Virus record (IMG/VR): IMGVR_UViG_3300027844_001828
Location: 124,001 to 188,000 of that record
DNA: 64,000 bases
Direction: 5' to 3' (one strand)
Part shown: positions 14,313-52,754 of the stretch, in pieces
Layout: every line of letters starts with the position of its first letter
How positions within the stretch are numbered: position 1 is the stretch's first letter
The notes under the pieces: generated by a model
What the model was told of the DNA's origin: nothing
The model's input: only the letters and a program-made list of their open reading frames with translations
The model's database searches: none
Made by a program: the position numbers and the translations under genes

Positions 14313-14726
14313 TTGAAATGGAAGTGTAACGTTCCGAGAGAGACTTTTGAGATTCAATTCGGAGATATCAATCTTGAAGTTTTTAGAACGAATCACATCC
14401 CTGACTCATCTGTCGATTGGACAACAGCTTTCGCGATCTATGGCGTATTGATTAATGGAAGAGTTTTGCATCCAGTGGATACACAATTTAATCCTAATTT
14501 AATTAATTATTACTATAACAACTATAATATTGAACATATTTTTCACGACGTTCAATTTTTTCCAGGAGCGGTTCATGCCCCTCTTGAAGATTTGAAGACG
14601 TTGCCAGATGACATTAAAGCAAAGATGTCACTTGTTCATTATTCTGATAATTATGAGGAACAAGACATCACTGGATTTTACGGATGGACCAAGCAAGGAG
14701 TTAGCTACGTGTTTGAGAAGGATTAG
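14313..14726 (+). pseudogene. C-terminal half of an MBL-fold metallo-hydrolase (5'-truncated)
   Basis: TNHIPD, DTQF, IFHDVQ, VHAPLEDL, LVHYSD motifs; no N-terminal HxHxDH in ORF or upstream; TTG start. Confidence 0.6.
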
Positions 14727-15928
14727 CCTCTGGTTAATTCTTCCACTTCACCCTTAAGATCTTCTTTGGTAACAGACATGTCGCATGCAAGCCACATGTC
14801 AATGAAATCACTTTCGGCATAATTGTATGAGACATATCCATATCCGTCATTACCCCAACGGGAGCCCCATGAGTTCTTGAACTTGAATAGTTTCTTTTTC
14901 TCGTCGTATCCAACGACACAAACTGCATGGCCACCAATTGATTTCTCACCAGGATTCCTATCTGGGACAATTCCATCCCTGTTAGTATAGAAAATTCCAT
15001 AATAGACGCGCATTCCAATAATTACTGGTCCGCATTCTTTTAAGGCGATCTTTAAGTCATCAATATTGGCGATTCTTTCATAAGACTTGATTCTTCCCCA
15101 TCTAGCAATCAAGTGAGCCCATGACTCTGGCTCACCGACTTCAACATCGCTGTATGGCCACGCTTCTTCAGTTGGGACTCCAATCTTGCTTAATACTTTC
15201 ATAGCGACTCTAATAGACGTTCCTTCACTATTAGGCCATCTATCAATTTTCTTGCAGTTGTAATAAATCCATTGTTCAGAAAGATCGTAATGGGTTTTCT
15301 CTCTTTGATCCCTTTTACCGGCGGCGACTTCATCAACGTGCTCTTTTTGCTCTTGCCATTCTTTCATGGATGCCGCCGCGAATGCTACACAGCTACCGAG
15401 TTTTCCTTGAGACTTGACTGGTGACATTTCATTCTCGTAATCATATCCGTTAATATTTTGGCTGGTTCCGAATTCGAATACATAATCTCTATCATCCTTT
15501 TCATCAAATTGAAGGTTCAAAGGAAAGTCCATGTTTAATTCCATTGGAGCATCGGAGCTTGAATAGCTGCTGCTTGAATAGCTAACCCAACTTGAACATG
15601 AAGATGAAGAGGATGATTCGACAAATTCATCTGGTGGGTTATCAGAGTCTTCTTTATATCTTGCGATTCTCCATAATTTATCTGCTGTTATTTGGGTATC
15701 TACATAACCCATTCCGCCCTGTGCAAGAAGAGCGACAATTGCCTCTTTCCATAATTGCGCCTCAGCATTAGATATTAGTATCCCACCAATATTAAGCATT
15801 TCATAATTGAACACTATCTTACCCTCATCCTCAAGATTTTGGATCACCAGAAGGATCTCTTCGTCAGTAGCGGCCTGATCGACTGTTGTGTTCTCATCGG
15901 CTAACAAGGCCATTGTGTCAAGTATCAT
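14723..15928 (-). CDS. papain-like (C1A) cysteine peptidase with unknown N-terminal domain and Ser-rich linker
   Basis: SQGKLGSCVAFA (catalytic Cys), GGHAVCVVGYD (His), KNSWGSRWG.DGYG (Asn). Confidence 0.9.
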   Translation of the reverse strand: MILDTMALLADENTTVDQAATDEEILLVIQNLEDEGKIVFNYEMLNIGGILISNAEAQLWKEAIVALLAQGGMGYVDTQITADKLWRIARYKEDSDNPPDEFVESSSSSSCSSWVSYSSSSYSSSDAPMELNMDFPLNLQFDEKDDRDYVFEFGTSQNINGYDYENEMSPVKSQGKLGSCVAFAAASMKEWQEQKEHVDEVAAGKRDQREKTHYDLSEQWIYYNCKKIDRWPNSEGTSIRVAMKVLSKIGVPTEEAWPYSDVEVGEPESWAHLIARWGRIKSYERIANIDDLKIALKECGPVIIGMRVYYGIFYTNRDGIVPDRNPGEKSIGGHAVCVVGYDEKKKLFKFKNSWGSRWGNDGYGYVSYNYAESDFIDMWLACDMSVTKEDLKGEVEELTRG

Positions 15929-16006
15929 GATTTTACCAATTGATATATTGAAATTAATGCATATTCTTTATTTCTTGATAATTTCCGATTTATCCTATGT
16001 CAGAGG

Positions 16007-16034
16007 TTGAAAAACTCGTGGTATCATGTATATT
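16007..16034 (+). promoter_or_regulatory. sigma70-like promoter (TTGAAA-N16-TATATT)
   Basis: Direct reading, divergent from the C1A gene. Confidence 0.5.
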
Positions 16035-16082
16035 GTGGGGTATGTACTACACGACTTATAAAAACTAATTTAGGAGAGCATT

Positions 16083-16256
16083 ATGCCAGAACAAGCGGAG
16101 TTCGATTTCGGTGAGGCCAGGTATAGGATTGTTGGAGTAGTTCTAAAAAAGAACGACAAGACAATGTATGTCGAAGCCACATTGCCAGAAGATTTTGGCG
16201 GCAAGACAGTCAAGATGAAGAGGCATATCGTTAAGCATAACGTTGTCATTGTATGA
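16083..16256 (+). CDS. small hypothetical protein (57 aa; not in ORF track)
   Basis: AGGAGAG RBS, ATG 16083, TGA overlapping next ATG (ATGA). Confidence 0.6.
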   Translation: MPEQAEFDFGEARYRIVGVVLKKNDKTMYVEATLPEDFGGKTVKMKRHIVKHNVVIV

Positions 16257-16696
16257 ACTTGTATGAGATCCATGACTACTGTGAAGAGCCATGGTCAAAT
16301 AAAGTGCGTTCTTACTGGAAATTCATAAGTGGAGAAGTTTGCCATGTCCTGACCGGGAAAACATATGGTAAAATATTTCTGCTACCATTGAAGCTTGATG
16401 GTGTCACTCATCATGGGCTACTATTTGAAAGACCAATAATTTTGCCAAAAGAGAGAAATATACTTTGGCATGAAAGGGGCCATGTCGTTGTTGGAAAGCA
16501 AGTTAGCTCGACTATGGATGAGTATTTCGCCGATGAATGGGCGATCAATGAGTGTCTTGAGAGAGGTTTTAATTTGATTGCTAAAGAAATAATATTGCGC
16601 TGTAAACACTGGTTATCAGTTGATAATCTACCCGTAGAATATAAAGATTCTGGAAGAATGATCGTTAAAAAATTCTCACAATATTTGACTGTATGA
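16253..16696 (+). CDS. HExxH zincin-like metallopeptidase-domain protein
   Basis: LWHERGHV followed by EYFADEWA. Confidence 0.5.
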   Translation: MNLYEIHDYCEEPWSNKVRSYWKFISGEVCHVLTGKTYGKIFLLPLKLDGVTHHGLLFERPIILPKERNILWHERGHVVVGKQVSSTMDEYFADEWAINECLERGFNLIAKEIILRCKHWLSVDNLPVEYKDSGRMIVKKFSQYLTV

Positions 16697-16754
16697 AAAA
16701 TGCATGTATAGTATGTTGTCCAAAGAACTAAATACTTAAAACACGGTTAATACT

Positions 16755-17384: not shown

Positions 17385-17890
17385 CTTGCAATGATTGTAG
17401 GAATGAAATAAACGAACACCCCTTCCATATATTGAAATGTATAGTTGGGAATCTATTGGGGGATTTATTCTTGTGTCCCGGATGTTTTTTCATAAGAACC
17501 GCCGGTGAGGCAGAAATCATTGGATCTATGGGCGATGACATCATTGTATACAATGAGGGTATGAGCGCTATCGCGAAAGAGTTTTACGAGGTGCCATGCC
17601 CGAATTGTAGCACCAGCCTTAATGATATTAACACTAACGGTCTCTTCGGGTGTGAAGAATGTTATGTTAATTTTTGTGAAATGATAAACATTGCAGAAGC
17701 GAAGGGCTGTCAAAAGATTAAAAAAGACAAGCCCAAGAACATTGATAACAATTTTGAGGGCAACAAGGATGAGGCCCGCAAAAGGGTCTTGAAACAACAG
17801 CTTAAGCAGGCTGAAGAAAAAGAAAATTATGAGAAGTGCGCCGAGATAAGAGACGAATTAGCAAAAATTGATCAAGAGGGAAAACAATGA
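17381..17890 (+). CDS. mcsA: McsA-like protein (CxxC zinc motifs + C-terminal UVR domain)
   Basis: CNDC, CPGC, CPNC, GCEECY; LKQQLKQAEEKENYEKCAEIRDEL; adjacent to McsB-like gene. Confidence 0.8.
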   Translation: MTCNDCRNEINEHPFHILKCIVGNLLGDLFLCPGCFFIRTAGEAEIIGSMGDDIIVYNEGMSAIAKEFYEVPCPNCSTSLNDINTNGLFGCEECYVNFCEMINIAEAKGCQKIKKDKPKNIDNNFEGNKDEARKRVLKQQLKQAEEKENYEKCAEIRDELAKIDQEGKQ

Positions 17891-18945
17891 TTAAGGGAAT
17901 AAATGTTGATAAGCTTTTGAAGGGCGTCCCTATATGGTTGAGAAACGACTCAACTGTCAAGGAAAAATCCATAGTTCTACATAGAAATATTAAGGGGATA
18001 AAGTTCCCTCACATGGCTAGCGAGAAAGAACTCCAATCAGTTTGCGCCATGGTCGCAAAAAGAATGATGGGATTGGAAGAGTTCAATGCTTGGGAATTTG
18101 ATTTGGTTTCGTCAATAAAGAAATTAAATCGGTATATTTTGTATGAGAACAAAGTCGCAGATGAGGCTATCATACCAGTTGGAACTGATATGAATGAGCT
18201 TCCAATGGCGCTCTTTGTTAACGAAGACGGATCTCAGTCGGTATTCGTCAACTCACAAGACCATATTGAGGTGCGAGTCAAAAGCGACAAGTTGGGACTT
18301 CAAGAGTTGTTGGCGAGAGGTCACTCAATTCTTGAGAGCTTGGGATTCGATTATGCAAAGGTCGATCCATTTGGTTATGTAACAGCAAGCCCGGCTTTGA
18401 TGACCCTTGGCATGGAAGCGCAGATATTCACGCACATTCCTGGGATAATTATATCAGAAAGGAACGAAGACTTGGAAAATTTGTTGGAAAACAATAAATT
18501 AGTCGCTTCAGGTTTTTTCGGGCACAATACTCATTTCACTTGCAACTTCTATACTTTTGCAAACCAGCATATAGCAATGAGATCAGAAGAAGAGATTGCC
18601 AATACCTTAGTAGGCGTTTCGAAAAGAATTGAGGCTCTTGAAGAAGAGTGCAGGGAGGAATATGACATCGAAGATCTTAAGGACATAGTCGCTCGATCAT
18701 GGGGAACATTGAATTATGCCAATAAGGTAGACTTAATGGAATCGATAGTCGGGCTCAGTCATTTACTTATGGGCACGGAGTTAGGTCTTTTGAAAAACGT
18801 TTCAAAAGAAAAAACAAAACAAGCCTTGTCAGATGTCTTTCATTATAAAATATTAAAGCGGCATAAATGTCCACCAGACAATGTTGATTTTATTCGAGCG
18901 AAGGGGATCAAGAAAACCTTAAATGGAAAGAGGGAAGCGAATTGA
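17887..18945 (+). CDS. mcsB: McsB-like ATP:guanido phosphotransferase fold, catalytic residues degenerate
   Basis: LHRNIKGIKFP, FVNSQDHIE, GYVTASP, THIPG, ANQ...SEEEI, RSWGTL collinear with McsB; NEED, Cys and ATP-binding Arg residues replaced. Confidence 0.8.
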   Translation: MIKGINVDKLLKGVPIWLRNDSTVKEKSIVLHRNIKGIKFPHMASEKELQSVCAMVAKRMMGLEEFNAWEFDLVSSIKKLNRYILYENKVADEAIIPVGTDMNELPMALFVNEDGSQSVFVNSQDHIEVRVKSDKLGLQELLARGHSILESLGFDYAKVDPFGYVTASPALMTLGMEAQIFTHIPGIIISERNEDLENLLENNKLVASGFFGHNTHFTCNFYTFANQHIAMRSEEEIANTLVGVSKRIEALEEECREEYDIEDLKDIVARSWGTLNYANKVDLMESIVGLSHLLMGTELGLLKNVSKEKTKQALSDVFHYKILKRHKCPPDNVDFIRAKGIKKTLNGKREAN

Positions 18946-20042
18946 GCGAGACTACGACTACCACCAGAAAGGCGAGAGCTAAAAAATCAACCGGACCTAT
19001 TGATATGAATACATCAATTGATAAGATCGTTCCATTGTTTAAGAGCAAGGAACCAAAGGCAGCTATATTTATGCATCAGACCCCAGACCCAGACGCTATT
19101 GGATCAGCAGTGGGTCTCCAATATCTCCTTAAGCATAAATACAAGGTCGAAAGCGATATATTTTATGCTGGCGAGGTTTCGCATAGACAGAATCAAACAT
19201 TGATGAATGTATTGTCATTTTCATTCTATGGACCAGATCATTATGGGAAAAATAAAAAATCATATGACGCAGGGATCTGTGTTGATTGCAACCCGTCGAA
19301 TGTATTTATTGAGGGCGTCGATGACAGCACTATTGACTTGGTCATTGATCACCACAAAATAGAAACATCAAATAACAGTGTTGTGTATGATGTTAGGAAT
19401 TGCGGATCATGTGCCACTATCATTGCTGATTTAATGAGAGAGATAGATTGTCTCCCGAAAGGCGACGAAGGAAAGACTGTAGCTACCGCTATGATCGTTG
19501 GGATGCGAACAGACACAAATGATTTATTGTCGGCAAATATGACAGACCTTGATTTCGACGCCTACAAAAACATATTAGCTCTTGCAGACGGTCAAAAGAT
19601 CACAATGATTGTGAATTACCCCAAGGCATCTTATTACTTCGAACTTCTCAGTAAGGTGATTGCAGAGAGTACAATAAAGAATACAACCTACATAGCATCT
19701 GTTGGATTGATTTCCGAGGCTAAACGCGATGTTCTTCCATCTATTGCTGACGAAATTGTCAGAATGGAAGGAATCTCAACCTCAATCATATTTGGCATAG
19801 TGAACGATAGGATATCTGTTAGTGTAAGAAGTGAAGACGTAACACTTGATGTGAACGCTTTTTGCAAGAAGATATTTGGAGATGAGTTCTCAGGTGGAAA
19901 ATATGGGTCTGGTGGAGCAAGCATTCCACTTGGATTCTTTGGAGGGATAGCTTCTGAACCGGATGCTGTAAAAGACAAGACGGTAGATGCTATCAAAACA
20001 AAATTAACACATATCATTGAGAAAGAAGTCACAAGTGAGTAA
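18942..20042 (+). CDS. DHH/DHHA1 family phosphoesterase
   Basis: HQTPDPDAIGS, ICVD, VIDHH, GSCATI, DT.D, GGK.GSGG. Confidence 0.88.
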   Translation: MSETTTTTRKARAKKSTGPIDMNTSIDKIVPLFKSKEPKAAIFMHQTPDPDAIGSAVGLQYLLKHKYKVESDIFYAGEVSHRQNQTLMNVLSFSFYGPDHYGKNKKSYDAGICVDCNPSNVFIEGVDDSTIDLVIDHHKIETSNNSVVYDVRNCGSCATIIADLMREIDCLPKGDEGKTVATAMIVGMRTDTNDLLSANMTDLDFDAYKNILALADGQKITMIVNYPKASYYFELLSKVIAESTIKNTTYIASVGLISEAKRDVLPSIADEIVRMEGISTSIIFGIVNDRISVSVRSEDVTLDVNAFCKKIFGDEFSGGKYGSGGASIPLGFFGGIASEPDAVKDKTVDAIKTKLTHIIEKEVTSE

Positions 20043-20044
20043 CA

Positions 20045-27750: not shown

Positions 27751-27830
27751 AATATCTCTTCAACACAGCTTGAAAACCAGGTTTGGCGAGCTATATTCTA
27801 ACCTTAACCAAACAACAGGAGAGCATCAAA

Positions 27831-29780
27831 ATGAGTCTTACCCCCACACAATTGACTGAAGCGAGTGAACTTATTACAAAACTTAGGTTGTGGAAAAACG
27901 CCTATTACATTGATAACAAGCCAGTTGTGTCAGATCAGGTATATGATGGCGGCGAAATGCGCCTCAAGCAGTTGATTCCTGATCACCCGTTCTTCGATGA
28001 GGTTGGATCGACAGTAGATGGGTTCAAGCCTATCGACTATGTTGCCGCAGGCGGTGAAAAGATGCTCAGTCTTGAAAAAGCCTATACAGAGCCGGAAGTG
28101 ACAAAATTCGCCGGGAAGGACGCATGGGTTCCAATGGTCAAGCTTGACGGAACTTCGCTCCGAGCAATCTACAGCGGCGGTAAGATCGAACTTGCCCACA
28201 CAAGAGGTAATGGAACTGTTGGTGATGACGTTACCAACAACTTCTACTTTGTGAAAGGATCGACTCCCAAGAAATACAAATGGGACACCTTTGAAGTCAA
28301 AGGCGAAGTTTGCATGACCTTTGATGATTTCGATGCGGTTAACATCGAAAGAGAAAGGGATGGGGAAGAAGTCTTCAAAAACCCCCGGAATGCCGCCAGT
28401 GGGTCTCTTAAGCAATTGGACATGTTCGAGACCGCAAAAAGAAAATTGCAGTTCGTCGCCTACGCAATAAAAGTAGAGGGGCACAGTTTCAAGTCGAAGA
28501 CTGAAATGCTTGATTCCTTGGAAGAAATGGGCTTCGTCACGGCAAGACTCAAGATTAAATTCAATACGATTGCTGATGTCATTGATAAAGTGACGAAGAT
28601 GCGTGAAAAAATTCCGATTCCGATTGATGGTATCGTCTTCGCTCTTGATGCCGTATCAGTGAGAGAAAAGAAAGGCTATACTGGTCATCACCCGAAATAC
28701 GAAATGGCTTACAAGTTCGCATCCGAAAGCGGGATCACCAAGTTGCTCGATTACGAATGGAACGTCACGAGAACTCGTCGTATTGTTCCCGTTGGTCTCA
28801 TTGAAGACATCGAACTCTCAGGGGCTGTTTGCTCAAGAGTCACGCTTCATAATGCGAAATGGGTCCATGACAAACATATTGCTATTGGCGAAGAGATTGT
28901 TATTGAAAGAAGCGGCGATGTCATTCCTCACTTTGTCAAAACTGTGAGAGCTACAAAAGACATTCCCTGGTCCTCGAAAGACAATCTTCCGACCAAATGC
29001 CCTGCCTGTAGAACCACACTTGTCAGAGTAGGCAATGTTGACCTCGGATGTCCTAACGAACATTGCTCTGGTGCTGCTTACGAGGCGATTATGCACTATG
29101 TAGGCAAGCCAGTTGTTAATATCAAGGCGGTAGGTGACAAATTGATCGCCCAACTCATCAAAGCGAATCTTATTGAAGACCCCGCAGACCTCTTCACATT
29201 AACCAAGAGTGACCTTATGACCCTTGATCGAATGGGTGATAAGAAGGCTGAAAAGACACTCGAAGCGATTAATAAGGCAAGGACTCAAGACGTGCAAACA
29301 TTTCTCAGGTCACTTGGTGTTGAATTACTTGGAAAGGATGTGTCTGAAAAGATCGCAGACTTCGTTGATCTTGATACATTAACTGTGACACGTGATTTGA
29401 CGCATATTGATGGAATAGCTGAAACGACAGCAACAGCGGTGACAGAAGGTCTTGACAAATCCAGACCACTTGCAGATAAGTTGCGTCAATATGTCAAGAT
29501 CACAACTGGTAAAGCTGTTGCACTTGGTAATTCCCTCGAAGGAAGCGCATTTTGTGTCAGCGGGAGCGTCGAATTTGATCTCGACGGTGAAAATTATTCA
29601 GAACGTAGTCAAATTCAGAACTTGATCAAGTCATACGGTGGTAAGGTCTCCAGTTCTGTATCTGGCAGAACGAGTTACCTCGTTGCTGGCCCAGGGTCTG
29701 GAAGCAAGTCAACAAAAGCAGATGACCTCGGTGTTACAATCATCGATGGTAATAAATTGGCAGAATTGATTGAAAATTGA
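27831..29780 (+). CDS. ligA: NAD+-dependent DNA ligase
   Basis: KLDG adenylation motif, TRGNG..GDDVT, FKNPRNAASGSLKQ, IDGIV, Zn finger, HhH, BRCT; promoter TTGAAA-N16-TATATT at 27770-27797. Confidence 0.95.
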   Translation: MSLTPTQLTEASELITKLRLWKNAYYIDNKPVVSDQVYDGGEMRLKQLIPDHPFFDEVGSTVDGFKPIDYVAAGGEKMLSLEKAYTEPEVTKFAGKDAWVPMVKLDGTSLRAIYSGGKIELAHTRGNGTVGDDVTNNFYFVKGSTPKKYKWDTFEVKGEVCMTFDDFDAVNIERERDGEEVFKNPRNAASGSLKQLDMFETAKRKLQFVAYAIKVEGHSFKSKTEMLDSLEEMGFVTARLKIKFNTIADVIDKVTKMREKIPIPIDGIVFALDAVSVREKKGYTGHHPKYEMAYKFASESGITKLLDYEWNVTRTRRIVPVGLIEDIELSGAVCSRVTLHNAKWVHDKHIAIGEEIVIERSGDVIPHFVKTVRATKDIPWSSKDNLPTKCPACRTTLVRVGNVDLGCPNEHCSGAAYEAIMHYVGKPVVNIKAVGDKLIAQLIKANLIEDPADLFTLTKSDLMTLDRMGDKKAEKTLEAINKARTQDVQTFLRSLGVELLGKDVSEKIADFVDLDTLTVTRDLTHIDGIAETTATAVTEGLDKSRPLADKLRQYVKITTGKAVALGNSLEGSAFCVSGSVEFDLDGENYSERSQIQNLIKSYGGKVSSSVSGRTSYLVAGPGSGSKSTKADDLGVTIIDGNKLAELIEN

Positions 29781-30081: not shown

Positions 30082-31251
30082 ATGGAAATTGACATGATAA
30101 AATCAATGTTAGATTCAGATTTATACAAGTTTTCAATGCAAGCAGCAGTTCTTCACAATTTCCCCGGAGTAATTGTTGAATACCGTTTCAAATGCAGAAG
30201 TGTATGGGCGGATCTCGCCCAGCATAGGGATGAAATCGAGAGACAAATAGGTTTCCTTGGCAACCTTTACCTCACTCCCGACGAAGAGAAACAGGTTCGC
30301 GAGAAAATACCTTTCCTCAAGCCAGACTATGTTGATTTCCTTTCTGAATTCAGATTCAACCCTGATTTCGTGAAAGTTGAAACGATTTCTGATACTGAGA
30401 TTGATATTATTGTTCGCGGCCCATGGCTCCAAACAATTCCTTTCGAGGTCCCAATCCTTTCTATTGTTGAAGCAGTAGCATGCAAAGACTTAATGACTGA
30501 TGAAGCCTTGAGCATTGGCAGAAGAAACTTGGCTGACAAGATTGAAATCATCAAGGCCGTTGGTCCAGAATTCAAATTAGCAGATTTCGGGACTCGTCGC
30601 AGAGCGAGTTTCGAGCAGCAACGTTATGTTGTAGAGACACTTACGAATGAAGTTCCAAACAACTTTGTTGGGACAAGCAATGTCTCCCTCGCTTTAGATA
30701 ACAATATTAAACCAATCGGAACGATGGCGCATGAGTGGATTCAAGCAATGCAAGGTCTCACTTGGTTGCTCAATAGCCAGAAAATGGCTTTAGATATATG
30801 GATGAAAGAATATCGTGGTCAGCTTGGTATTGCTTTGTCCGACTGTCTTGGATACGCCGCTTTCCTTAGAGACTTCGATTTCCTCTTTTCGAAGAGCTAT
30901 GACGGCTGTCGCCATGACTCTGGCGATCCGTTTGAATGGGGTGAGAAGTTGATTAGACACTATGAATCAATGAGCATCGATCCGAAAACAAAGACAGCAG
31001 TATTCAGCGATGGTCTCGACATGATATTGGCCGTGAGGTTGTTTGAAAGGTTCCATGGGAGAATCAAAGTCTCTTTCGGCATTGGCACCCACTTGACCAA
31101 CGACCTTGGATTTGATCCTGTTCAGATCGTTTTGAAGATGGTCGAGTGTAATGGTCAACCGGTAGCAAAGATAAGCGACTCGTCTGGCAAGGGTATGTGT
31201 AATAACGCCGTATATCTTACCCATCTTAAAAACATGTTTGAGGTGGATTGA
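30082..31251 (+). CDS. pncB: nicotinate phosphoribosyltransferase
   Basis: LDSDLYKFSM, ADFGTRRR, GTSN, GTMAHEW, RHDSGDP, FSDGL, FGIGT, KISDS.GK. Confidence 0.93.
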   Translation: MEIDMIKSMLDSDLYKFSMQAAVLHNFPGVIVEYRFKCRSVWADLAQHRDEIERQIGFLGNLYLTPDEEKQVREKIPFLKPDYVDFLSEFRFNPDFVKVETISDTEIDIIVRGPWLQTIPFEVPILSIVEAVACKDLMTDEALSIGRRNLADKIEIIKAVGPEFKLADFGTRRRASFEQQRYVVETLTNEVPNNFVGTSNVSLALDNNIKPIGTMAHEWIQAMQGLTWLLNSQKMALDIWMKEYRGQLGIALSDCLGYAAFLRDFDFLFSKSYDGCRHDSGDPFEWGEKLIRHYESMSIDPKTKTAVFSDGLDMILAVRLFERFHGRIKVSFGIGTHLTNDLGFDPVQIVLKMVECNGQPVAKISDSSGKGMCNNAVYLTHLKNMFEVD

Positions 31252-43989: not shown

Positions 43990-44930
43990 ATGTTGGAAGT
44001 GGTTAACGCCGCATCTAACAGAAAGTAAAAACTGAATATTTAATTTAAGGGCAGTATGATGTCCTCCTGTTCCCTTCGGGTAACAGGTTAAGATAAGCCA
44101 TGGAAACATGGTGAAATGGGGGACCCGCTACGGGCCTCGCCAAACTCTTCGGAGAGTGGTCAGTTATGCAAACCAAGCTTCTGTGAATTTCCCTCTTGGG
44201 GAGTTATACTTGAAGGTGGAGATTAAATGAATGTGGTGGCCAACGGTGGCTATGTTCTACTAACGTTAGCGACGAGAACTTATCTTATGCCAAACATCGA
44301 AAGTTAAGAAGCAAAGGGTAGTTGTGTTGTCTGAGTTTGCAGACAAAGGCTTCACAGCAGATTGTTGGGTAACAGGAAACCATTTAACAATGGGGGACCT
44401 GAAGTCCTGTAAATCCGTCTGGTAGCCCGCAAGGCCAAAGATATGAGGTGTGTGGCATTCTACTTCTCAAAAGGAAGCGGAACCATCGAGAGCGCACATC
44501 TTGGTAGATTTATCTGTAGCTCAATAGCAGAGCTATTCCCTCATACGGAATCGGTTTTGGTGCAACTCCAAACGGATATTTTTTAACGAAAATAAAAAAA
44601 CGCAAAGACGCTCTCGGTAGTAGGTGAAAATGGCCTAATTCCAAATCCTTCGGGTAATTTGGAGACGTGAAGCTCGCAAGGCAGATCGTTTTAGGACAAG
44701 TTAAAATTTAGTGGATTAGCGTTCACGAACTGTTCATAAGGCAGGAATGGAAACGAGTTCTGATTAGCTTACTATGACGGCGCAGTCGCAGGCGCTTAAT
44801 AAAATTGCGGTCATGATCGATGTCTGGTGTCCAGCTTGCTGGCCCAGAAGGAAATTAGGGCAAGGCACGTCGCAAGCGTACTGTAATCCTGAAGAGTCGA
44901 TTATTGAAGGTGTATTTCTCAACCTTTTAA
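43990..44930 (+). ncRNA. large structured ncRNA, GOLLD-like (~940 nt)
   Basis: Bracketed by promoter and terminator; UUCG and GNRA hairpins (CCTGTT-CCC-TTCG-GGT-AACAGG, CCATG-GAAA-CATGG, CTC-TTCG-GAG, GCCC-GCAA-GGC, ATCC-TTCG-GGT); motifs GGGTAGTTGTGTTG, GTGTGTGGCATT..CTCAAAAGG, CGCAAAGAC, TTAGTGGAT, CGCAAG as recalled for GOLLD. Confidence 0.75.
44510..44580 (+). tRNA. tRNA-Met(CAT)-like element embedded in the GOLLD-like RNA
   Basis: Acceptor TTATCTG/CGGATAT (1-72 mismatch), D arm GCTC-AATAGCA-GAGC, anticodon arm ATTCC-CTCATAC-GGAAT, T arm TTTGG-TGCAACT-CCAAA; no encoded CCA; atypical T loop. Confidence 0.7.
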
Positions 44931-46810: not shown

Positions 46811-46824
46811 ATAGATGTTTGGTG

Positions 46825-46946: not shown

Positions 46947-47027
46947 CTTCATTTAATAAGAAAACTTAGAGATTTCACTTCCCTCCGATTTATTTCATAG
47001 ACAAACAAAGCAACATAAGGATACACT

Positions 47028-49082
47028 ATGAAGCACTTCATTTTTTTGAGAAACAGTCTTGTACAATTCCCGGCCCAAGCCAAGGATGACCAAGCGTCAA
47101 GAAATATCGTCGGAACGATTTGTTCCAATTTGCTTTATTATGGGTATATATTCTCAACAGAAGCCTTGCGTGAATTCAACAAGTTAAGCGATGAAAACGT
47201 CATTGCGTGGTGGGAGACCGTCGAGCCTGCATTTAAGGAAATCACTGGTGAGTCCAAGAATATGGGTGATCATGTTGTCTATAAGAACTTTCCAAAGGAA
47301 GTACTTGATAAGTCATTGGCCGAGTATTGGATTTGCCAAATCTTTATGTACCTTGGCGTTCCAAATGAATTTTTCACGACCGAAGAGGTCGAAAGAGACC
47401 AGATGTTTGAAAGTATTTCTCTTAAGACACTTCAAGTCGCAAGAGCAAATAAGGAGCAGGACATCTGTCATGAGCTTTGTTTGACTCCGGCCAGATGGAC
47501 TGATGAGCAATCAATGTTTGTTGAACATCTTATTATCAATGAGAAGTGCTATTTTAATTTGTCAAAAATCCCCTTCAAGGAAAACATGATCCAAGTCGCA
47601 GTCTTGGCCATGAATAATGGTTTGGCGGCGAGTGTCAATTCAGCCACGGATGTGTTGCGCCTTGCAATTGGATTGTCCGATGGTGACATAACCATGCGAA
47701 CCAACACGCCATTTAGAAACTTTACGCGGAAGGAAAGACGTTTCTTGCTCACCTTGATTGAAAATCAGAATGATTGTGAGGAAGACATCGCTATGGACAA
47801 GAATCGTTGGAAGAAGCTTTTAAACAGATTGCATCCAGGCGATTATAAGAATGCTTTCCCGAATGTGGTGAAGGCAAATAACAACTTGTACAACAACAAC
47901 GTTGTCAGCTTCAATTCAAAGCTTGAGAAATATCTTGAGACTGAAGACGCATACGCTCTCGTTCTTCTTAAGAGCAGACCCGGTGTCTTTGCAAGAAGAT
48001 TGTCTCACGCTATTTCAATATTTGGAAGCGCGGCCATCGACGCTTTCGCAGAAATTTGTCCAAAGCTCACGGTTATTAAACTCCTTAAGGTGAAGAAGTT
48101 CTTTTCAACCTTGAAGGAAAGAAATCATCTTGTTTATCCGCCGAAGAGTAATTGGGCCAAGTTGCAGATCGTTGAAAACTCAAAGGCGATACGTCACAAT
48201 CCACAGGTCATAACTCTTATTGGGAAGATCGACGATGCTCTTAATGAGAAGATGAGTGGAATTTCTGTCAATCTTGATTCCAGAACGAGTCTCGTTAAAA
48301 TCCAGGGCAACGACTCTGAATTAACGAACTATGGTCGTGGAACCGTGTTCCCGATTCCAGAGAATATTAATTTCATCAGAAGCGCAAGCTATTGGGAATT
48401 ACCTGACACTTTTAACAATTGGTACGACAATGGTTGGAACTTCTTTAACAAGGATTGGAAGGAAAAGGGCGCGTGTTGCTGGGCGAATATGACTTTCGCC
48501 AGAAAGGGATGCGCATTCTCTGGCGATCCAACCAACTCAAAGACTGCTGACGGAAAGGCGTGTCAAATGATCGACTTGTACATTGACAAGTTGTTAGCTT
48601 TTGGAGTACGTTATGCTGTTTGGAATGTCTTGTGCTATTCTCATAAGAAGTTCAGCGAGGCCACTGAGGTCTTTGGTGCGCTTCAATGGGGTGAGGCTCC
48701 GCAAAAGGGTAAGCTCTTCGAGCCAAGCCGTTGCCAACTCTCATTTCCAATTACTGGTGAATGCTATACCAAGTATATCGCATACATTGACTTGGAGAAG
48801 CGTGAACTTGTCTACATGGACGCTAACTTCAAGGCTGACGTTTCTTCCGCAAAGGAAAATGGTCGTATGCTTTCAGAAGTAATGCCAGCCTACATTGAAT
48901 ACTTGAATTCGTTGCCGAGCGTGTTCGATCTCTTCTCACATGCGAAGCAGGACGTGAATGGGACCGCTGTAGCCTATGACGATAGCAATATCGATATCAA
49001 GGGCACAAGTGCCTATGTATTCAATCCGACAAATGAGAACAACTCGTTCGAGCAGCTTGAAGTCGCCAAATTTTTATCTTAA
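47028..49082 (+). CDS. large hypothetical protein with C-terminal TerD-like region
   Basis: RPGVFARRL, GRGT.FP, FSGD.T, MIDL.IDKL, VRYAVWNV..YS..KF features of Ter-associated stress proteins. Confidence 0.6.
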   Translation: MKHFIFLRNSLVQFPAQAKDDQASRNIVGTICSNLLYYGYIFSTEALREFNKLSDENVIAWWETVEPAFKEITGESKNMGDHVVYKNFPKEVLDKSLAEYWICQIFMYLGVPNEFFTTEEVERDQMFESISLKTLQVARANKEQDICHELCLTPARWTDEQSMFVEHLIINEKCYFNLSKIPFKENMIQVAVLAMNNGLAASVNSATDVLRLAIGLSDGDITMRTNTPFRNFTRKERRFLLTLIENQNDCEEDIAMDKNRWKKLLNRLHPGDYKNAFPNVVKANNNLYNNNVVSFNSKLEKYLETEDAYALVLLKSRPGVFARRLSHAISIFGSAAIDAFAEICPKLTVIKLLKVKKFFSTLKERNHLVYPPKSNWAKLQIVENSKAIRHNPQVITLIGKIDDALNEKMSGISVNLDSRTSLVKIQGNDSELTNYGRGTVFPIPENINFIRSASYWELPDTFNNWYDNGWNFFNKDWKEKGACCWANMTFARKGCAFSGDPTNSKTADGKACQMIDLYIDKLLAFGVRYAVWNVLCYSHKKFSEATEVFGALQWGEAPQKGKLFEPSRCQLSFPITGECYTKYIAYIDLEKRELVYMDANFKADVSSAKENGRMLSEVMPAYIEYLNSLPSVFDLFSHAKQDVNGTAVAYDDSNIDIKGTSAYVFNPTNENNSFEQLEVAKFLS

Positions 49083-49152
49083 TTGGTTATCTGATAACCA
49101 CTTGAAATTTTCTGAAACCATGTTATGATAATAAGGTAACAGGAGGATCAGG

Positions 49153-49494: not shown

Positions 49495-49501
49495 GGCTTA
49501 C

Positions 49502-51475
49502 ATGAAAAAAATTAATCGTGACGAGTTGATCGGTAAGATTAAGGAAAGAGAGTCGAAGCTTGAAAACGCTTCGATTGAACTCAAAAAACATTTCGTTGGT
49601 CTTAATCCAACAATCGATGAAATAATCGATTCAATAAGAGTCTGGTACATTATGCCAGAAATTATCACACATCCGGTAATCGTAAATCTTTGGGGAATGA
49701 CTGGAGTTGGGAAAACCGATTTGATTCGTCGCCTTGTACAGCTTCTTGATCTTAGTGATCGTTTTCTTGAAATGCCAATGGACATTGAAGACACAAGTAA
49801 CTTCCACTGGCACAGTTCAATTCAAGGTGTTCTTGGATGTAGCAGTCTTGAGCCCGAAACTCCAGGCGTTGTTCTCTTTGACGAATTCCAACGTTATCGC
49901 ACCATTGACGAGCATGGCCATGAGCGTACCGATCTTAAGAGGTTTCAAGATATTTGGACCCTTCTTAGCGATGGAAAGTTTTCAAACTCCGGCAAGGGTA
50001 AGAATGAGATCCTTGAGATGTTAATGGACACTCTTTATTATGAAGAGAGAAGTGGAGACGACGACGCCGATGTAGAGCCCCCTATTGAACATGGTAATTT
50101 GACAACTAAGAGTAAGAACAAGAAAAATAAGGAAGTCAGCACTAAGAAGCGCTTTAGCTTCAGTTTCTATTCTGCCAAATCATTAAAGAAGACTCTCAGA
50201 ATCCCTGACACCATTGAAACCATAATGAAATGGACCGCCGAAACCAAAAAGAAGAAAATCATGGAGGCAATGGAAAGAGATGATATCCTTCATGGTGAAA
50301 GCTATTCCCAACTTTTGATTTTCATTTGTGGTAATCTTGATTCTGCATTCTGGATGGCCTCCCGCGCTGAAGATGCAGATACCGATGCAGATATCTTGCA
50401 CAAGCGAAGTCTTGATATTAACACAATAGATATCCGCACTTCATTGAAAACGAGATTCAGGTATGAACAGATTGCCCGACTTGGCAATACTCATATCATT
50501 TATCCGTGCTTGTCTTCAAAATCTTACCGGGAACTTATTTCTAGAAAGATCATAGACGCAACCAATAGTTTTAAGGCAAGCACCGACATTGACATCAAAG
50601 TTGATCGTTCGGTAAACAATGTGATATACAGAAATGGGGTGTTCCCCGCTCAAGGTGTAAGGCCAGTATTTAGTACGATCAACAGTTTGTTTACAACTTC
50701 AATGCCACCATTTATCATGGCGGCGCTCTTAGAAGACTGTAATCAAATTGACGTATCCTTCAAAGACAACAAAATGGTTTGTAAAATACGCGATCAAAAT
50801 CTCAGTAAGAAGGTGACCTGTAGTATTGACAATATTAAGGGCAAGACTTCTGAGGAACAAAAGCATCTCGTGGCGTTGCACGAAGCTTCACATGCTGTTG
50901 TTTATATGTTGAAGTTTGGCGTTGCGCCATGTCAGATTAAAAGTAATATATCAATGTTCTCTGGCGGCTTTGTAATGCCACACTCTATGTTAGAGTCAAA
51001 GAATATCTTGATAAGCTTGATTCAGGTTTATCTTGCTGGCCGTCTCGGTGAAATCGCATTTTTTGGTGACGGGATGACCTCGTCAGGGTGCGCTTCCGAT
51101 CTTATGGAAGCAACTAAGTTGGCCAGTAAAATGCTCCGTCGTTACGGCATGGGTGATAGCTTGTCAGTTGTTGTGACATCTAACTTTGAAGATGCCAGTC
51201 TTCTTAATCTTGATGTTGACGGAACAAACAAAGATATTGATTTGATACTTGACAATCGAGCCAAGGAAACGTCTATTATCATTAACGAAAATTTATCCTT
51301 CATTGGCGCAATCGCTGATGAATTGATGAGAAAGAATGGTGAGATGACAGATAAAGAGGTCGCTAAAATAGCCGAAGAGTTTTGTGAAAATAAAATTGAG
51401 TGTCTCCCAGCTGATCATAAAATCACTGAGAGTTATGTTGATAAGTATAATGAGAGGCGAACGGATGAAAATTAA
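49502..51475 (+). CDS. AAA+ ATPase fused to C-terminal M41 (FtsH-type) metallopeptidase; no TM segment
   Basis: Walker A GMTGVGKT, Walker B VLFDEFQ, ALHEASHA, LAGRLGE, SDLMEAT. Confidence 0.85.
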   Translation: MKKINRDELIGKIKERESKLENASIELKKHFVGLNPTIDEIIDSIRVWYIMPEIITHPVIVNLWGMTGVGKTDLIRRLVQLLDLSDRFLEMPMDIEDTSNFHWHSSIQGVLGCSSLEPETPGVVLFDEFQRYRTIDEHGHERTDLKRFQDIWTLLSDGKFSNSGKGKNEILEMLMDTLYYEERSGDDDADVEPPIEHGNLTTKSKNKKNKEVSTKKRFSFSFYSAKSLKKTLRIPDTIETIMKWTAETKKKKIMEAMERDDILHGESYSQLLIFICGNLDSAFWMASRAEDADTDADILHKRSLDINTIDIRTSLKTRFRYEQIARLGNTHIIYPCLSSKSYRELISRKIIDATNSFKASTDIDIKVDRSVNNVIYRNGVFPAQGVRPVFSTINSLFTTSMPPFIMAALLEDCNQIDVSFKDNKMVCKIRDQNLSKKVTCSIDNIKGKTSEEQKHLVALHEASHAVVYMLKFGVAPCQIKSNISMFSGGFVMPHSMLESKNILISLIQVYLAGRLGEIAFFGDGMTSSGCASDLMEATKLASKMLRRYGMGDSLSVVVTSNFEDASLLNLDVDGTNKDIDLILDNRAKETSIIINENLSFIGAIADELMRKNGEMTDKEVAKIAEEFCENKIECLPADHKITESYVDKYNERRTDEN

Positions 51476-51635
51476 AGAACTCCAAGAATTAGTCAATGGT
51501 AGATTCATTGACGCCTTTGGCAGAACACCACTTCGGCAGCGACAGGAAGATATTTTGGGCGAGGCGATTGAACTCAAAAACGCAACAGATATTACGAATC
51601 TCAGAGAAGAGACGGGGGATTTGCTTCAACAATGA
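51465..51635 (+). CDS. MazG-like helical fragment, apparently the frameshifted N-terminus of the NadD gene
   Basis: EDILGEAIEL...NLREETGDLL; continuation (AST)MMLCSESGWSVEEL lies in another frame. Confidence 0.55.
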   Translation: MKIKELQELVNGRFIDAFGRTPLRQRQEDILGEAIELKNATDITNLREETGDLLQQ

Positions 51636-52342
51636 TGTTGTGTAGTGAGTCTGGCTGGTCAGTAGAAGAGCTTGTGCAGTCAACTCTTAATAAGACAGAG
51701 AGAAGAAAGGAGCAATACCACACGTTGGGGAGAAAGACAAAGGTCGCTCTTCTTGGTGGGGCTTTTAATCCGCCTACGATTGGCCACTTAAGGCTTGCAC
51801 AGTTCATTCTCGATACAAGTAAGAACTTCGATGAGGTTTGGTTTGTACCGTGTTATCAGCACATGTATAACAAAGAACTCGTTACACCAGAGCATAGATT
51901 GGCTATGTGTAACTTGTTATGCGCTAACGATTGCAGAATAAAGACATTTGATTATGAGATCAAAAATCAATTACGTGGTGAGACTTACCATTTTGTAAAG
52001 AGATTGCTTGATGAAGACTTTGCAAAAGACCAATATGATTTTAGTATGATAATTGGGTTGGACAATGCTAACACATTTGATAAGTGGGTGAACTACGAAG
52101 ATCTTGAGAAGATGATGCGCTTTGTCGTGGTGTCTCGACAAGGGACCGAAAGAGATGAGTCTGTAGACTGGTACTTAAAGCCACCACACATTTATCTTTA
52201 CAGTGGTGGTGATGTCCCAGAGATATCTTCAACGGAAATCAGAAGGTGTATCGTCGAAGACGACACATCACAAGCCGCTTACGTTAAAGAGTTCATGGAT
52301 GATGGGGTATGGAAATACCTTTGTGATAACGAACTTTATTGA
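51632..52342 (+). CDS. nadD: nicotinate-nucleotide adenylyltransferase
   Basis: LLGGAFNPPTIGH, HRLAM, IIGLDNANTFDKW, EISSTEIR. Confidence 0.88.
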   Translation: MMLCSESGWSVEELVQSTLNKTERRKEQYHTLGRKTKVALLGGAFNPPTIGHLRLAQFILDTSKNFDEVWFVPCYQHMYNKELVTPEHRLAMCNLLCANDCRIKTFDYEIKNQLRGETYHFVKRLLDEDFAKDQYDFSMIIGLDNANTFDKWVNYEDLEKMMRFVVVSRQGTERDESVDWYLKPPHIYLYSGGDVPEISSTEIRRCIVEDDTSQAAYVKEFMDDGVWKYLCDNELY

Positions 52343-52354
52343 ATTAAGGCATAG

Positions 52355-52387
52355 AAAAGGGGCGGCAATTACTTGCCGCCCCTTTTT
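52355..52387. terminator. bidirectional intrinsic terminator between convergent genes
   Basis: AAAAGGGGCGGCAA-TTAC-TTGCCGCCCCTTTT perfect inverted repeat. Confidence 0.88.
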
Positions 52388-52406
52388 ATTTAAGCTTGTC
52401 TTAAGA

Positions 52407-52754
52407 TTAGCTTGAGCTTGAGCTTGAACTTGAAGCAATGCTCTCTGGCAATTCAACGTCCAGGTTGGTCTTAAGTCTGAAACGATAATCAATTTCGGCG
52501 ATCATCGAATCACTAATTGTTGAATACTGCCCATTGTCCATAATCCCTTCAAGGAAAAACTTAAGACTTTGGAATCCCGCATCGACAACAGCTGTGCCGC
52601 CAACGTCAAGGTATTCATATGATGTTTGCAATTTTCCAGCGGTCACGAGGGAAGTCAAAAAAGTCACAATTTCATCGACAGTTGGACTGCTGTTGAAACT
52701 ATTGTCATTGTCATGATCAGCCATCGCTGCTAATGTGTTGTATATTAGGCTCAT
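52407..52754 (-). CDS. stand-alone homolog of the C1A peptidase N-terminal domain with poly-Ser tail
   Basis: Collinear with aa 1-100 of 14723..15928 (T.A..AD, T.dEI, GK....YE.L.vGG). Confidence 0.7.
   Translation of the reverse strand: MSLIYNTLAAMADHDNDNSFNSSPTVDEIVTFLTSLVTAGKLQTSYEYLDVGGTAVVDAGFQSLKFFLEGIMDNGQYSTISDSMIAEIDYRFRLKTNLDVELPESIASSSSSSSS

What the first reader, a model, noticed from the sequence alone, without database searches (positions are those of the whole stretch)
14723..52754. Unrecognised ~100-aa domain present both alone and fused to a papain-like protease
Seen: 14723..15928 aa 1-100 (ILDTMALLADE…TDEEILLVIQNLEDEGKIVFNYEMLNIGG…AQLWKEAI…QG) aligns with 52407..52754 (IYNTLAAMADH…TVDEIVTFLTSLVTAGKLQTSYEYLDVGG…FQSLKFFL…NG). 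Both are on the - strand and both are followed by poly-Ser. I recognise no family. Inference: a targeting/virion-docking domain or a propeptide, with the free copy acting as a trans inhibitor or competitor of the protease.
Basis: partly seen in the sequence, partly recalled or inferred. Interest (0 to 1): 0.6.

Follow-up and report, generated by a model that had tools for sequence, protein, structure and literature searches.

The report
New modular N-terminal adaptor domain, jumbo phages
Two genes of a 236-kb marine phage share a previously undescribed ~90-residue N-terminal domain that related uncultured phages carry either alone or joined by serine-rich linkers to many different passenger domains, so it looks like a common docking handle and not a protease propeptide or inhibitor.

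Summary
The first ~100 residues of the 401-aa papain-family protease (14723-15928, -) and the 115-aa protein (52407-52754, -) are homologous (BLASTP E 7e-8). Profiles built without them find only these two ORFs in the 235,624-bp phage genome (E 2.5e-16 and 1.8e-25).

The domain matches no family in Pfam or PHROGs, no PDB sequence, and no fold in PDB, BFVD or the ESM Atlas. I found about 30 relatives, all in uncultured large-phage contigs. The domain always sits at the N-terminus. It occurs free (77-106 aa) or fused, mostly through poly-Ser linkers, to Peptidase_C1, FG-GAP or RCC1 propellers, Laminin_G_3 lectins, a Cys-rich module or unknown modules. One 332-kb contig has four tandem fusions plus a free copy.

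The partner is unknown. My best guess is a virion site that displays adhesin-like passengers.

A serious rival comes from one clade. In 7 of 9 contig types there, the free copy lies directly upstream of a membrane-tethered cell-wall hydrolase. That suggests a lysis-linked role.

I rate it a new domain family of a familiar architectural kind, of moderate interest.

The parts
14723..15928 (-). Gene for P0001 (401 aa): N-terminal adaptor domain, Ser-rich linker, papain-family (C1) peptidase
   Evidence: ORF list and translation; Pfam PF00112 7.8e-23; phrog_16701 1.2e-30
15629..15928 (-). Adaptor domain, copy 1 (P0001 aa 1-100). The conserved core is aa 1-~85, and the extreme N-terminal helix is the best conserved part.
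   Evidence: BLASTP E 7e-8 to P0002; leave-out profile E 2.5e-16; 29-sequence alignment A3 with M1, I2, T5, L6, A7, A10, D11 (near-)invariant; AF2 model pLDDT 75
15554..15619 (-). Ser/Cys-rich flexible linker (P0001 aa 104-125)
   Evidence: Translation; coordinates and mixed Ser codons
14819..15433 (-). Peptidase_C1 catalytic domain (P0001 aa 166-370) with Gln174, Cys180, His334, Asn352
   Evidence: Pfam match range; motif positions; 48-51% identical homologues in other phage contigs
52407..52754 (-). Gene for P0002 (115 aa): free-standing adaptor domain ending in eight Ser
   Evidence: ORF list and translation; good Shine-Dalgarno (AAGGAG) upstream of the ATG
52437..52754 (-). Adaptor domain, copy 2 (P0002 aa 1-106)
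   Evidence: BLASTP; leave-out profile E 1.8e-25; 57% identical free-standing relative P0003
52410..52433 (-). C-terminal poly-Ser stub (P0002 aa 108-115): a linker with no passenger behind it
   Evidence: Translation; codons TCA/AGT/AGC alternating; only 64 nt to the convergent neighbour, so no passenger remnant
53810..55471 (-). Candidate partner only (a lead, not shown): 553-aa protein made of four ~100-aa 'module X' repeats, each with two invariant Cys, separated by Ser/Cys linkers
   Evidence: Translation and module alignment. Its only homologue found (L024 2173-3177, two modules) also lies within ~1 kb of a free adaptor-domain gene in a distant phage contig. No Pfam or PHROG match.

Best explanation
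The shared region is a new, phage-specific N-terminal adaptor domain of about 85-100 residues. It is acidic, and the predicted order of elements is helix, helix, beta-hairpin, helix, helix.

It acts as a common docking handle. Through its highly conserved N-terminal helix (consensus M-I-F-D-T-L-A-A-M-A-D) and the core behind it, it binds one shared partner. A flexible Ser-rich linker holds out an interchangeable passenger: a papain-family peptidase in this phage, and FG-GAP or RCC1 propellers, Laminin-G lectins, a Cys-rich module or unknown modules in relatives.

The most likely partner is a site on the virion surface. The family would then be a plug-and-play display system for adhesin-like and enzymatic modules. 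The free copy (P0002, handle plus linker stub) would be a passenger-less version that occupies the same site.

Shown: the homology, N-terminal position, modular fusions, paralogue arrays, restriction to phage contigs, and lack of any known family or fold.

Inferred: that the domain binds a partner, and that the partner is on the virion.
For: (1) Architecture. An unbiased profile search of 1.84 billion proteins found 13 true relatives, all matching from residue 1-2 of the protein. Their lengths are 47-545 aa. The fused ones carry FG-GAP_2 (3.5e-83), RCC1 (3.2e-26; RCC1-like domain 4.3e-44), Peptidase_C1 (1.1e-15) or an unknown domain, three of the four behind long poly-Ser tracts.

(2) A DNA-pattern scan of metagenome contigs plus an HMM screen added 20 members. 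Four tandem paralogues sit on one locus (L120) and a free copy (L125) lies on the same 331,749-bp contig. L109 holds two more. Their passengers include Laminin_G_3 (5e-16, 1.6e-11, 3.6e-6).

(3) In the tree, nearly identical handles carry different passengers, and fusions occur in both major clades. Passengers are therefore swapped at the linker.

(4) Conservation is concentrated in the first ~24 residues, as expected for a contact surface.

(5) Passengers are of the adhesion or lectin type. The Iyer et al. jumbo-phage survey assigns such domains to tail fibres and other virion components (PMC7824862, read). Polyserine linkers are known from secreted multidomain enzymes of marine bacteria (titles, plus my own knowledge). 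None of the proteins has a signal peptide by eye, so riding on the virion is the simplest route outside the cell.

(6) In another phage lineage, the 48%-identical C1 peptidase is encoded inside the head module, in the order portal, acidic protein, C1, head maturation protease, major head protein. This shows that the peptidase passenger is virion-linked elsewhere.

(7) The family is absent from 185,579 species' genomes by the pattern-plus-HMM screen.
Against: - No partner has been identified, and there are no virion data.
- Genes carrying the domain are not found in recognisable structural modules. Their neighbours are nucleotide-metabolism, repair and NAD genes.
- In clade B the free copy is tied by synteny to a membrane-tethered cell-wall hydrolase, which points to lysis and not display.
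- The structure model is only moderate (pLDDT 75, pTM 0.54) and matches nothing.
- The head and tail genes of this phage could not be recognised, so no co-location test was possible.
- The metagenome scan required the consensus N-terminal peptide behind an ATG, so for those 20 members the N-terminal position is partly by construction.
Confidence: 0.42

Rival explanations
1. Lysis-linked module. The free domain is a cytoplasmic partner or regulator (antiholin-like, tether or chaperone) of a membrane-tethered, SAR-type cell-wall hydrolase. Fused versions bring other envelope-attacking or envelope-binding modules, such as the C1 peptidase here, to the same place.
For: - In 7 of 9 distinct clade-B contig types the free copy is followed on the same strand, at a gap of 6-409 nt, by a protein with three parts: a conserved cytoplasmic N-terminal W-Y/F motif, a weakly hydrophobic Gly/Ala/Ser-rich membrane segment, and a catalytic domain.
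- That catalytic domain differs between contigs: Phage_lysozyme 3.9e-8, 3.6e-8 and 6e-3; Hydrolase_2 1.1e-18; or unknown. The pairing is kept although the enzyme is swapped.
- The window's own genome shows no Phage_lysozyme, SLT or Amidase_2 and has the domain fused to a peptidase.
- P0002 is divergently adjacent to a 172-aa protein with an N-terminal membrane segment and a coiled coil.
Against: - The whole neighbourhood (radical-SAM, RecJ-like, DnaJ) is syntenic, so adjacency may be inherited gene order and not coupling.
- Two contig types lack the pairing.
- Neither copy in the window is next to a hydrolase.
- Propeller and lectin passengers have no obvious role in lysis.
- No holin or spanin was identified, and no embedded lipoprotein ORF lies in the neighbour.
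Confidence: 0.2
2. Head-internal targeting domain. The domain directs passengers into the prohead, like the T4 capsid targeting sequence, so that they are packaged and ejected into the host.
For: - The extreme N-terminus is the most conserved part and is predicted helical.
- The homologous C1 peptidase of another lineage is encoded between the portal and the head maturation protease.
Against: - Those head-module homologues do not carry this domain.
- The domain is 85-100 aa, far longer than a 10-20-aa targeting peptide.
- Lectin, propeller and Cys-rich passengers with long flexible linkers look extracellular.
- No gp21-type protease was found in the own genome, and no conserved cleavage motif was established.
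Confidence: 0.12
3. Self-association module. The domain makes homo- or hetero-oligomers among paralogues and so builds multivalent lectin or enzyme assemblies, without a separate partner.
For: - Several paralogues occur per genome, together with a free copy.
- The monomer model has only moderate confidence, as expected if folding needs a partner.
Against: There is no positive evidence. This reading does not explain why single-copy free forms are the commonest state.
Confidence: 0.1
4. One reading: a propeptide of the papain-like protease, with the free copy acting as a trans inhibitor or competitor of the protease.
For: C1A proteases normally have N-terminal inhibitory propeptides (established knowledge). 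Both forms, fused and free, occur in one genome.
Against: - The same domain is fused to non-protease passengers in most cases.
- A flexible poly-Ser linker intervenes.
- C1 homologues at 48-51% identity have another N-terminus.
- There is no I29 match.
- Most free copies were found on contigs showing no C1 fusion.
Confidence: 0.03

Closest known systems
N-terminal anchor domains of phage tailspikes and receptor-binding proteins (P22 gp9 head-binding domain; multi-spike anchor-branch systems of CBA120, G7C and PhiK64-1 type phages). From my own knowledge, not tested here.
   Same: A conserved ~100-residue N-terminal handle with interchangeable C-terminal working parts. Tandem arrays of paralogues share the handle.
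   Different: No sequence or fold similarity was found. The passengers here are small, probably monomeric propellers, lectins and a peptidase on poly-Ser tethers, not trimeric beta-helix spikes. Free handle-only genes are common, and the genes lie outside recognisable tail modules.
Capsid decoration proteins with an anchor plus a displayed domain (T5 pb10, T4 Hoc). From my own knowledge.
   Same: A small capsid-binding domain joined to an outward-facing adhesion domain. A passenger-less small protein would resemble Soc- or gpD-type decoration.
   Different: There is no homology, and binding to a capsid is not shown. One phage would carry several different passengers on the same handle, which is not known for pb10 or Hoc.
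Dockerin-cohesin assemblies and polyserine-linked secreted enzymes of marine Gammaproteobacteria (polyserine linkers: PMC2386152, PMC2699552, listed).
   Same: A plug-in handle on many different catalytic or binding modules, long flexible Ser-rich linkers, and a marine setting.
   Different: The handle is N-terminal and is not a dockerin (no Pfam match). No cohesin-like partner has been shown. The repeat protein at 53810-55471 is only a lead.
T4 capsid targeting sequence of internal proteins. From my own knowledge.
   Same: A conserved extreme N-terminus shared by otherwise unrelated proteins of one phage.
   Different: The T4 sequence is 10-20 residues long and is cleaved by gp21. Here there is a folded ~90-residue domain, and no gp21-type protease was found.
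I29 inhibitor propeptide of papain-family (C1A) proteases.
   Same: It lies N-terminal to a C1 catalytic domain.
   Different: There is no PF08246 match at E<=1. The domain is separated by a poly-Ser linker, is fused to non-proteases elsewhere, and is absent from the nearest C1 homologues.
Two-gene endolysin PlyC (small PlyCB subunit gene upstream of the catalytic PlyCA gene). From my own knowledge.
   Same: In clade B a small soluble protein gene sits directly upstream of a cell-wall hydrolase gene.
   Different: There is no homology. The hydrolases here are membrane-tethered, and the small protein's domain is also fused to lectins and propellers.

Membership tests
Peptidase_C1 (papain family), for the C-terminal part of P0001 | Profile match above the curated cut-off | tested here: met
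   PF00112 82.1 bits against a cut-off of 20.7, E 7.8e-23, aa 166-370; phrog_16701 1.2e-30
Peptidase_C1 (papain family), for the C-terminal part of P0001 | Catalytic Cys and His, the Asn, and the oxyanion Gln six residues before the Cys | tested here: met
   Gln174, Cys180 (G-S-C motif), His334 (G-G-H), Asn352 (K-N-S-W-G). All are conserved in homologues.
I29 propeptide of C1A proteases, for the N-terminal domain | Match to the Inhibitor_I29 profile, directly preceding the catalytic domain | tested here: not met
   No such family at E<=1 in the Pfam scan of P0001 or P0002. A 22-residue Ser-rich linker and ~40 further residues lie between.
Any described protein family or solved fold, for the N-terminal domain | Significant sequence-profile or structural match | tested here: not met
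   Pfam and PHROGs: none for the two proteins. PHROGs on all 29 members: best E 0.013, one member each. PDB sequence profiles: best E 0.22 and 1.5. Foldseek: PDB best E 0.63, BFVD 0.25. VIA-align: best Z 5.2, below the stated noise of 7-8. Atlas: TM <=0.40.
Dockerin (cellulosome) | Duplicated Ca-binding segment matching the dockerin profile | tested here: not met
   No dockerin family in the Pfam scan at E<=1
Double-glycine (bacteriocin/NHLP-type) leader peptide | E-L-x-x-I-x-G-G spacing ending the leader, with G-G conserved as the cleavage site | tested here: not met
   The local motif is E-x-L-x-V/I-G-G, which has different spacing. The G-G is not conserved in clade B and lies at the turn of the predicted hairpin. 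The passengers are large folded domains.
T4-type capsid targeting sequence | Short N-terminal peptide removed by a gp21-type prohead protease encoded by the same phage | tested here: not met
   The domain is ~90 aa. PF03420 and phrog_207 were not found in the own genome, but for both searches nothing rang in the control genomes either, so absence is weak. Cleavage is not testable here.
Phage receptor-binding-protein N-terminal anchors / capsid decoration anchors | Presence in the virion and binding to a defined tail or capsid site | not testable with these tools
   The phage is uncultured and there are no particle proteomics. The structural genes of the own genome were not recognisable.

The most novel reading that the evidence does not exclude
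The phage builds a cohesin-dockerin-like assembly. In this reading the adaptor domain docks onto the four Cys-bearing 'module X' repeats of the 553-aa protein encoded ~1 kb from the free copy (53810-55471). That would give a scaffold, virion-borne or released at lysis, that carries exchangeable peptidase, lectin and propeller passengers. The only support is that the sole homologue of the repeat protein also lies beside a free adaptor gene in a distant phage contig.
Probability: 0.07. Interest if true: 0.85.

Novelty: new variant of a known kind. Interest (0 to 1): 0.5.

Why it matters
If the domain is a universal docking handle, it defines a natural plug-and-play system. With it, large marine phages could hang different adhesins and enzymes on one site and exchange them at Ser-rich joints. 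That would give a direct route to the unknown partner, whether a virion site, a scaffold or a lysis protein. It would also supply a ready-made display tag for phage engineering.

If the lysis-linked rival is right instead, the domain marks a new class of partner for membrane-tethered endolysins.

Either way, a widespread family is now delimited well enough to be cloned and tested. The phage occurs in at least 11 seawater runs with half or more of the sampled words (9 of them flagged as possible sources of the assembly), and relatives occur in lake, sediment and brine contigs.

Tried and rejected
- Word-index protein search with P0002, with P0001 aa 1-130, and with the 14-sequence alignment. 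It returned only the two proteins themselves or members already known.
- IMG/VR scans with P0002, alignment A2 and the DNA pattern. They found only the same phage or a chance hit.
- tblastn against GenBank phages with three family members: no match.
- First AF2 model from two sequences: pLDDT 50, unusable.
- Complex prediction of the P0001 N-domain with P0002: no verdict (score 0.01, controls not run). This is not evidence either way.
- Winged-helix idea, from the helix-hairpin pattern: no fold match.
- RiPP or leader-peptide idea, prompted by a conserved leader, Ser/Cys-rich tracts, and nearby radical-SAM and subtilase genes. I rejected it for four reasons. The passengers are large folded domains. 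The free clade-B copies have no Cys/Ser core. The radical-SAM gene is a small Fer4_12 type. The poly-Ser/Cys tracts also link modules in proteins without the domain.
- The multi-stretch hits P0007, P0009, P0012, P0013 and P0017 of the big search. The four I scanned are repeat proteins (LRR, Ig-like, C10, eCIS), P0007 was not examined, and I treated all five as spurious.
- Shared promoter motif upstream of the two genes: none seen by eye.
- Looking for head, tail or endolysin genes in the own genome by family: none found, so the co-location tests failed.
- Homology between the unknown passengers of P0005 and L120: not significant.
- Module X in IMG/VR: no relatives.
- Whole-record search of the 332-kb contig: the record is not held.
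- Contexts of P0003, P0005, P0006 and P0018: the contigs are too short.
- Reads. A metatranscriptome run holds a 153-nt contig inside P0001 at 100% identity. This does not prove transcription.

Procedural points:
- No other genetic code was used.
- Read laying was given 1,601 letters.
- Pattern-scan loci from primate and human gut metagenomes were only screened with the family profile. They gave no hit and were not used further.

Full report
**1. What is in the window**

The window is bases 124001-188000 of a 235,624-bp IMG/VR virus record, estimated 93% complete. It has about 40% G+C and is mostly transcribed on the + strand.

Two - strand genes were flagged. P0001 (14723-15928, 401 aa) has three parts: an N-terminal region of ~100 aa, a Ser-rich tract at aa 104-125 with Cys, Trp, Val and Tyr interspersed, and a papain-family peptidase domain. 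The peptidase matches Pfam PF00112 (E 7.8e-23, aa 166-370) and phrog_16701 (1.2e-30). Gln174, Cys180, His334 and Asn352 are in place. P0002 (52407-52754, 115 aa) consists of the same kind of N-terminal region followed by eight Ser and the stop codon.

**2. Is the similarity real?**

Yes. BLASTP gives E 7e-8 with 25/98 identities. A profile of 27 relatives built without the two proteins picks out exactly these two among 2,498 six-frame ORFs of the genome (E 1.8e-25 and 2.5e-16), with nothing else at E<=10. A profile of the other clade alone still finds both.

The genome has only these two copies. The Ser tracts use mixed codons, so they are selected as protein and are not slippage repeats.

**3. 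Relatives**

Word-index searches found nothing beyond the proteins themselves. I therefore used the exhaustive profile search, run on the alignment of the two copies. It gave 13 true relatives, each matching from residue 1-2 of the protein.

- Seven full-length free proteins of 82-106 aa.
- A free copy of 94 aa that, like P0002, ends in a poly-Ser stub.
- A 47-aa fragment.
- Four fusions: FG-GAP_2 propeller (3.5e-83), RCC1 propeller, Peptidase_C1 (1.1e-15), and an unknown domain. Three of the four lie behind long poly-Ser tracts.

Five multi-stretch hits did not look like family members. The four I scanned are repeat proteins, and I set all five aside.

I then ran a DNA-pattern scan of metagenome contigs for the consensus N-terminal peptide and screened the hits with the family profile. 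This added 20 members.

- Locus L120 carries four tandem paralogues. Their passengers are a Cys-rich module, Laminin_G_3 and two unknown modules. A Peptidase_S8 gene precedes the array.
- A free copy (L125) lies on the same 331,749-bp contig.
- L109 has two more fusions, and L096 and L132 have one each. Laminin_G_3 scores 5e-16 and 1.6e-11.

The same pattern scan over one genome for each of 185,579 prokaryote species gave 98 loci, none of them a family member. GenBank phages have no match. On present evidence the family is therefore confined to uncultured large phages. This phage itself is marine.

One caveat applies. The pattern scan required the peptide directly behind an ATG, so only the 13 unbiased hits prove the N-terminal position.

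**4. Shape of the family**

The 29-sequence alignment shows that conservation is concentrated in the first ~24 residues. T5 is invariant, and M1, I2, L6, A7, A10 and D11 are nearly so.

The tree has two well-supported clades (100/99 each). Both window copies fall in clade A but are not sisters. P0002 groups with the free P0003. P0001 groups with the FG-GAP fusion and the other C1 fusion. Fusions occur in both clades, and nearly identical handles in L120 and L109 carry different passengers. Passengers are therefore exchanged at the linker.

**5. Fold**

With 29 sequences, AlphaFold2 gives pLDDT 75.2 and pTM 0.54. The elements are helix 2-12, helix 22-34, hairpin 42-47/50-55, helix 56-68 and helix 73-93. 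Nothing similar was found:

- Foldseek against PDB, best E 0.63.
- Foldseek against BFVD, best E 0.25.
- VIA-align, best Z 5.2, under the stated noise level.
- ESM Atlas, TM <=0.40.
- PDB sequence profiles, E >=0.22.
- PHROGs on all 29 members, none.

I cannot say the fold is new, only that no known one was recognised.

**6. Context**

In the window neither gene lies in a recognisable structural or lysis module.

- P0001 follows, convergently, a 1,362-aa protein of four beta-helix modules joined by Ser/Cys linkers, and an Apyc1-like fragment. An HNH endonuclease, an ATP:guanido phosphotransferase, a DHH protein and ribonucleotide reductase lie on the other side.
- P0002 lies between a cytidylyltransferase-like gene and a divergent 172-aa membrane and coiled-coil protein.
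- About 1 kb away on the same strand is a 553-aa protein (P0023). It is made of four ~100-aa repeats with two invariant Cys each, again joined by Ser/Cys linkers.
- The only homologue of that repeat protein in any sequence I held (L024, two repeats) also lies ~0.65 kb from a free adaptor-domain gene in a clade-B contig. This is two observations, so it is only a lead.

In clade B the free gene shows a striking synteny. In 7 of 9 distinct contig types it is followed on the same strand by a protein with three parts: a conserved N-terminal W-Y/F motif, a weakly hydrophobic Gly/Ala/Ser-rich membrane segment, and a catalytic domain. The catalytic domain varies between Phage_lysozyme, SleB-type Hydrolase_2 and unknown.

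These proteins look like signal-anchor-release type endolysins. That classification is my inference from the composition of the membrane segment. The surrounding genes (radical-SAM, RecJ-like, DnaJ) are syntenic too, so adjacency alone does not prove coupling.

The nearest homologues of the C1 peptidase (48-51% identity, IMG/VR contigs of 113-277 kb) have a different ~75-aa N-terminus. In the locus I annotated (L007) the gene sits inside the head module, in the order portal, acidic protein, C1 peptidase, head maturation protease, major head protein; L014 shows the same immediate neighbours. The window's genome has no homologue of those head genes.

**7. Interpretation**

The domain is attached to at least six unrelated passenger types, is separated from them by a flexible linker, and also occurs free. 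It is therefore a handle and not part of any one enzyme. This disposes of the propeptide/trans-inhibitor idea, and there is also no I29 signal.

What the handle binds is not shown. I favour a virion site for two reasons.

- The passengers are adhesion-type modules (propellers, concanavalin-fold lectins, Cys-rich modules). The jumbo-phage survey PMC7824862 places such modules on fibres and other virion components.
- Polyserine linkers are a hallmark of extracellular multidomain proteins of marine bacteria (papers listed, plus my own knowledge), yet these phage proteins have no signal peptide by eye.

Tandem arrays of paralogues that share an N-terminal handle are also the signature of multi-receptor-binding-protein phages (my own knowledge).

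The main rival is a lysis-linked role, suggested by the clade-B synteny and by the absence of a recognisable endolysin in this genome. Head-internal targeting and pure self-association are weaker rivals. The one complex prediction I ran (P0001 handle with P0002) gave no verdict and counts for nothing.

**8. Novelty and verdict**

The domain family is undescribed in the libraries searched and is now delimited at about 35 members. The architectural principle, a conserved N-terminal handle with swappable C-terminal modules, is familiar from phage receptor-binding and decoration proteins. I therefore rate it a new variant of a known kind, of moderate interest (0.5).

Noticed in passing
window 10140-14228 (+); also G000:C1:108462-109928 (L250): A 1,362-aa protein built of four ~330-aa right-handed beta-helix modules (Pfam Beta_helix 2.2e-10), each opening with a T/A-I-K-T-I-K/M-P motif and separated by Ser/Cys tracts. 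A fifth copy of the module follows a different 160-aa N-terminus in a 488-aa protein elsewhere in the genome. Two further Ser/Cys-linked proteins of 1,184 and 564 aa exist. None has a PHROG match.
   Followed up: partly
window 53810-55471 (-) and L024 2173-3177 (-): 'Module X': a ~100-aa repeat with two invariant Cys, present four times here and twice in L024. It has no Pfam or PHROG match. In both cases it lies within ~1 kb of a free adaptor-domain gene.
   Followed up: partly
window 27783-29780, 30082-31251, 35292-37226, 51632-52342, 55642-56202, 56852-58294 (all +): A rich set of NAD-related genes: NAD-dependent DNA ligase, nicotinamide phosphoribosyltransferase, NAD synthetase, two cytidylyltransferase-like (NMNAT-like) genes, and a full PARP (WGR, regulatory and catalytic domains).
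   Followed up: no
window 14313-14726 (+): A 137-aa ORF with a TTG start that matches only positions 148-227 of the 250-position anti-Pycsar Apyc1 profile (35 bits, below the cut-off of 50). It may be a fragment or a divergent metallo-beta-lactamase-fold protein. It is convergent with the protease gene.
   Followed up: no
window 17887-18945 and 18942-20042 (+): An ATP:guanido phosphotransferase (arginine-kinase-like) catalytic domain (3.7e-20), directly followed by a DHH/DHHA1 phosphoesterase.
   Followed up: no
window 49502-51475 (+): An FtsH-like protein: an AAA-type ATPase region plus a Peptidase_M41 domain (3.1e-17).
   Followed up: no
window 191-1000 (+) and 44510-44580 (+): A tRNA-His guanylyltransferase homologue (phrog_4717, 3e-76) and a tRNA-Met (CAT) gene.
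   Followed up: no
window 52921-53439 (+): A 172-aa protein with an N-terminal membrane segment and a long coiled-coil-like region, divergent from P0002. Its topology resembles an inner-membrane spanin. I saw no embedded or adjacent lipoprotein ORF, and it has no family match.
   Followed up: partly
L007 48-6746 (IMG/VR contig of 141,943 bp; likewise L008, L009, L014): In another large-phage lineage, a papain-family peptidase 48% identical to P0001's is encoded inside the head module, between an acidic scaffold-like protein and the head maturation protease.
   Followed up: partly
L042 2722-3480, L044 382-1194, L051 2684-3448, L066 5939-6817, L091 3766-4425 (-), L019 2386-3201: Membrane-tethered cell-wall hydrolases share a conserved N-terminal W-Y/F motif and a Gly/Ala/Ser-rich membrane segment, but their catalytic domains are swapped (GH24 lysozyme, SleB-type Hydrolase_2, unknown).
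   Followed up: partly
L120 1775-2674 (+) and L109 11693-12592 (-): A Peptidase_S8 subtilase gene (1.6e-49), with no obvious signal peptide, directly precedes the tandem array of adaptor-domain fusions.
   Followed up: no
whole genome G000: No match to T4-type or the tested head families (PF03420, PF07068, phrog_20655, phrog_207, phrog_213) or to Phage_lysozyme, SLT or Amidase_2. The structural and lysis genes of this phage are too divergent to name with these libraries.
   Followed up: partly
window 47028-49082 (+): A 684-aa protein with a very strong full-length match to phrog_33734 (2.2e-157), a family of unknown function.
   Followed up: no
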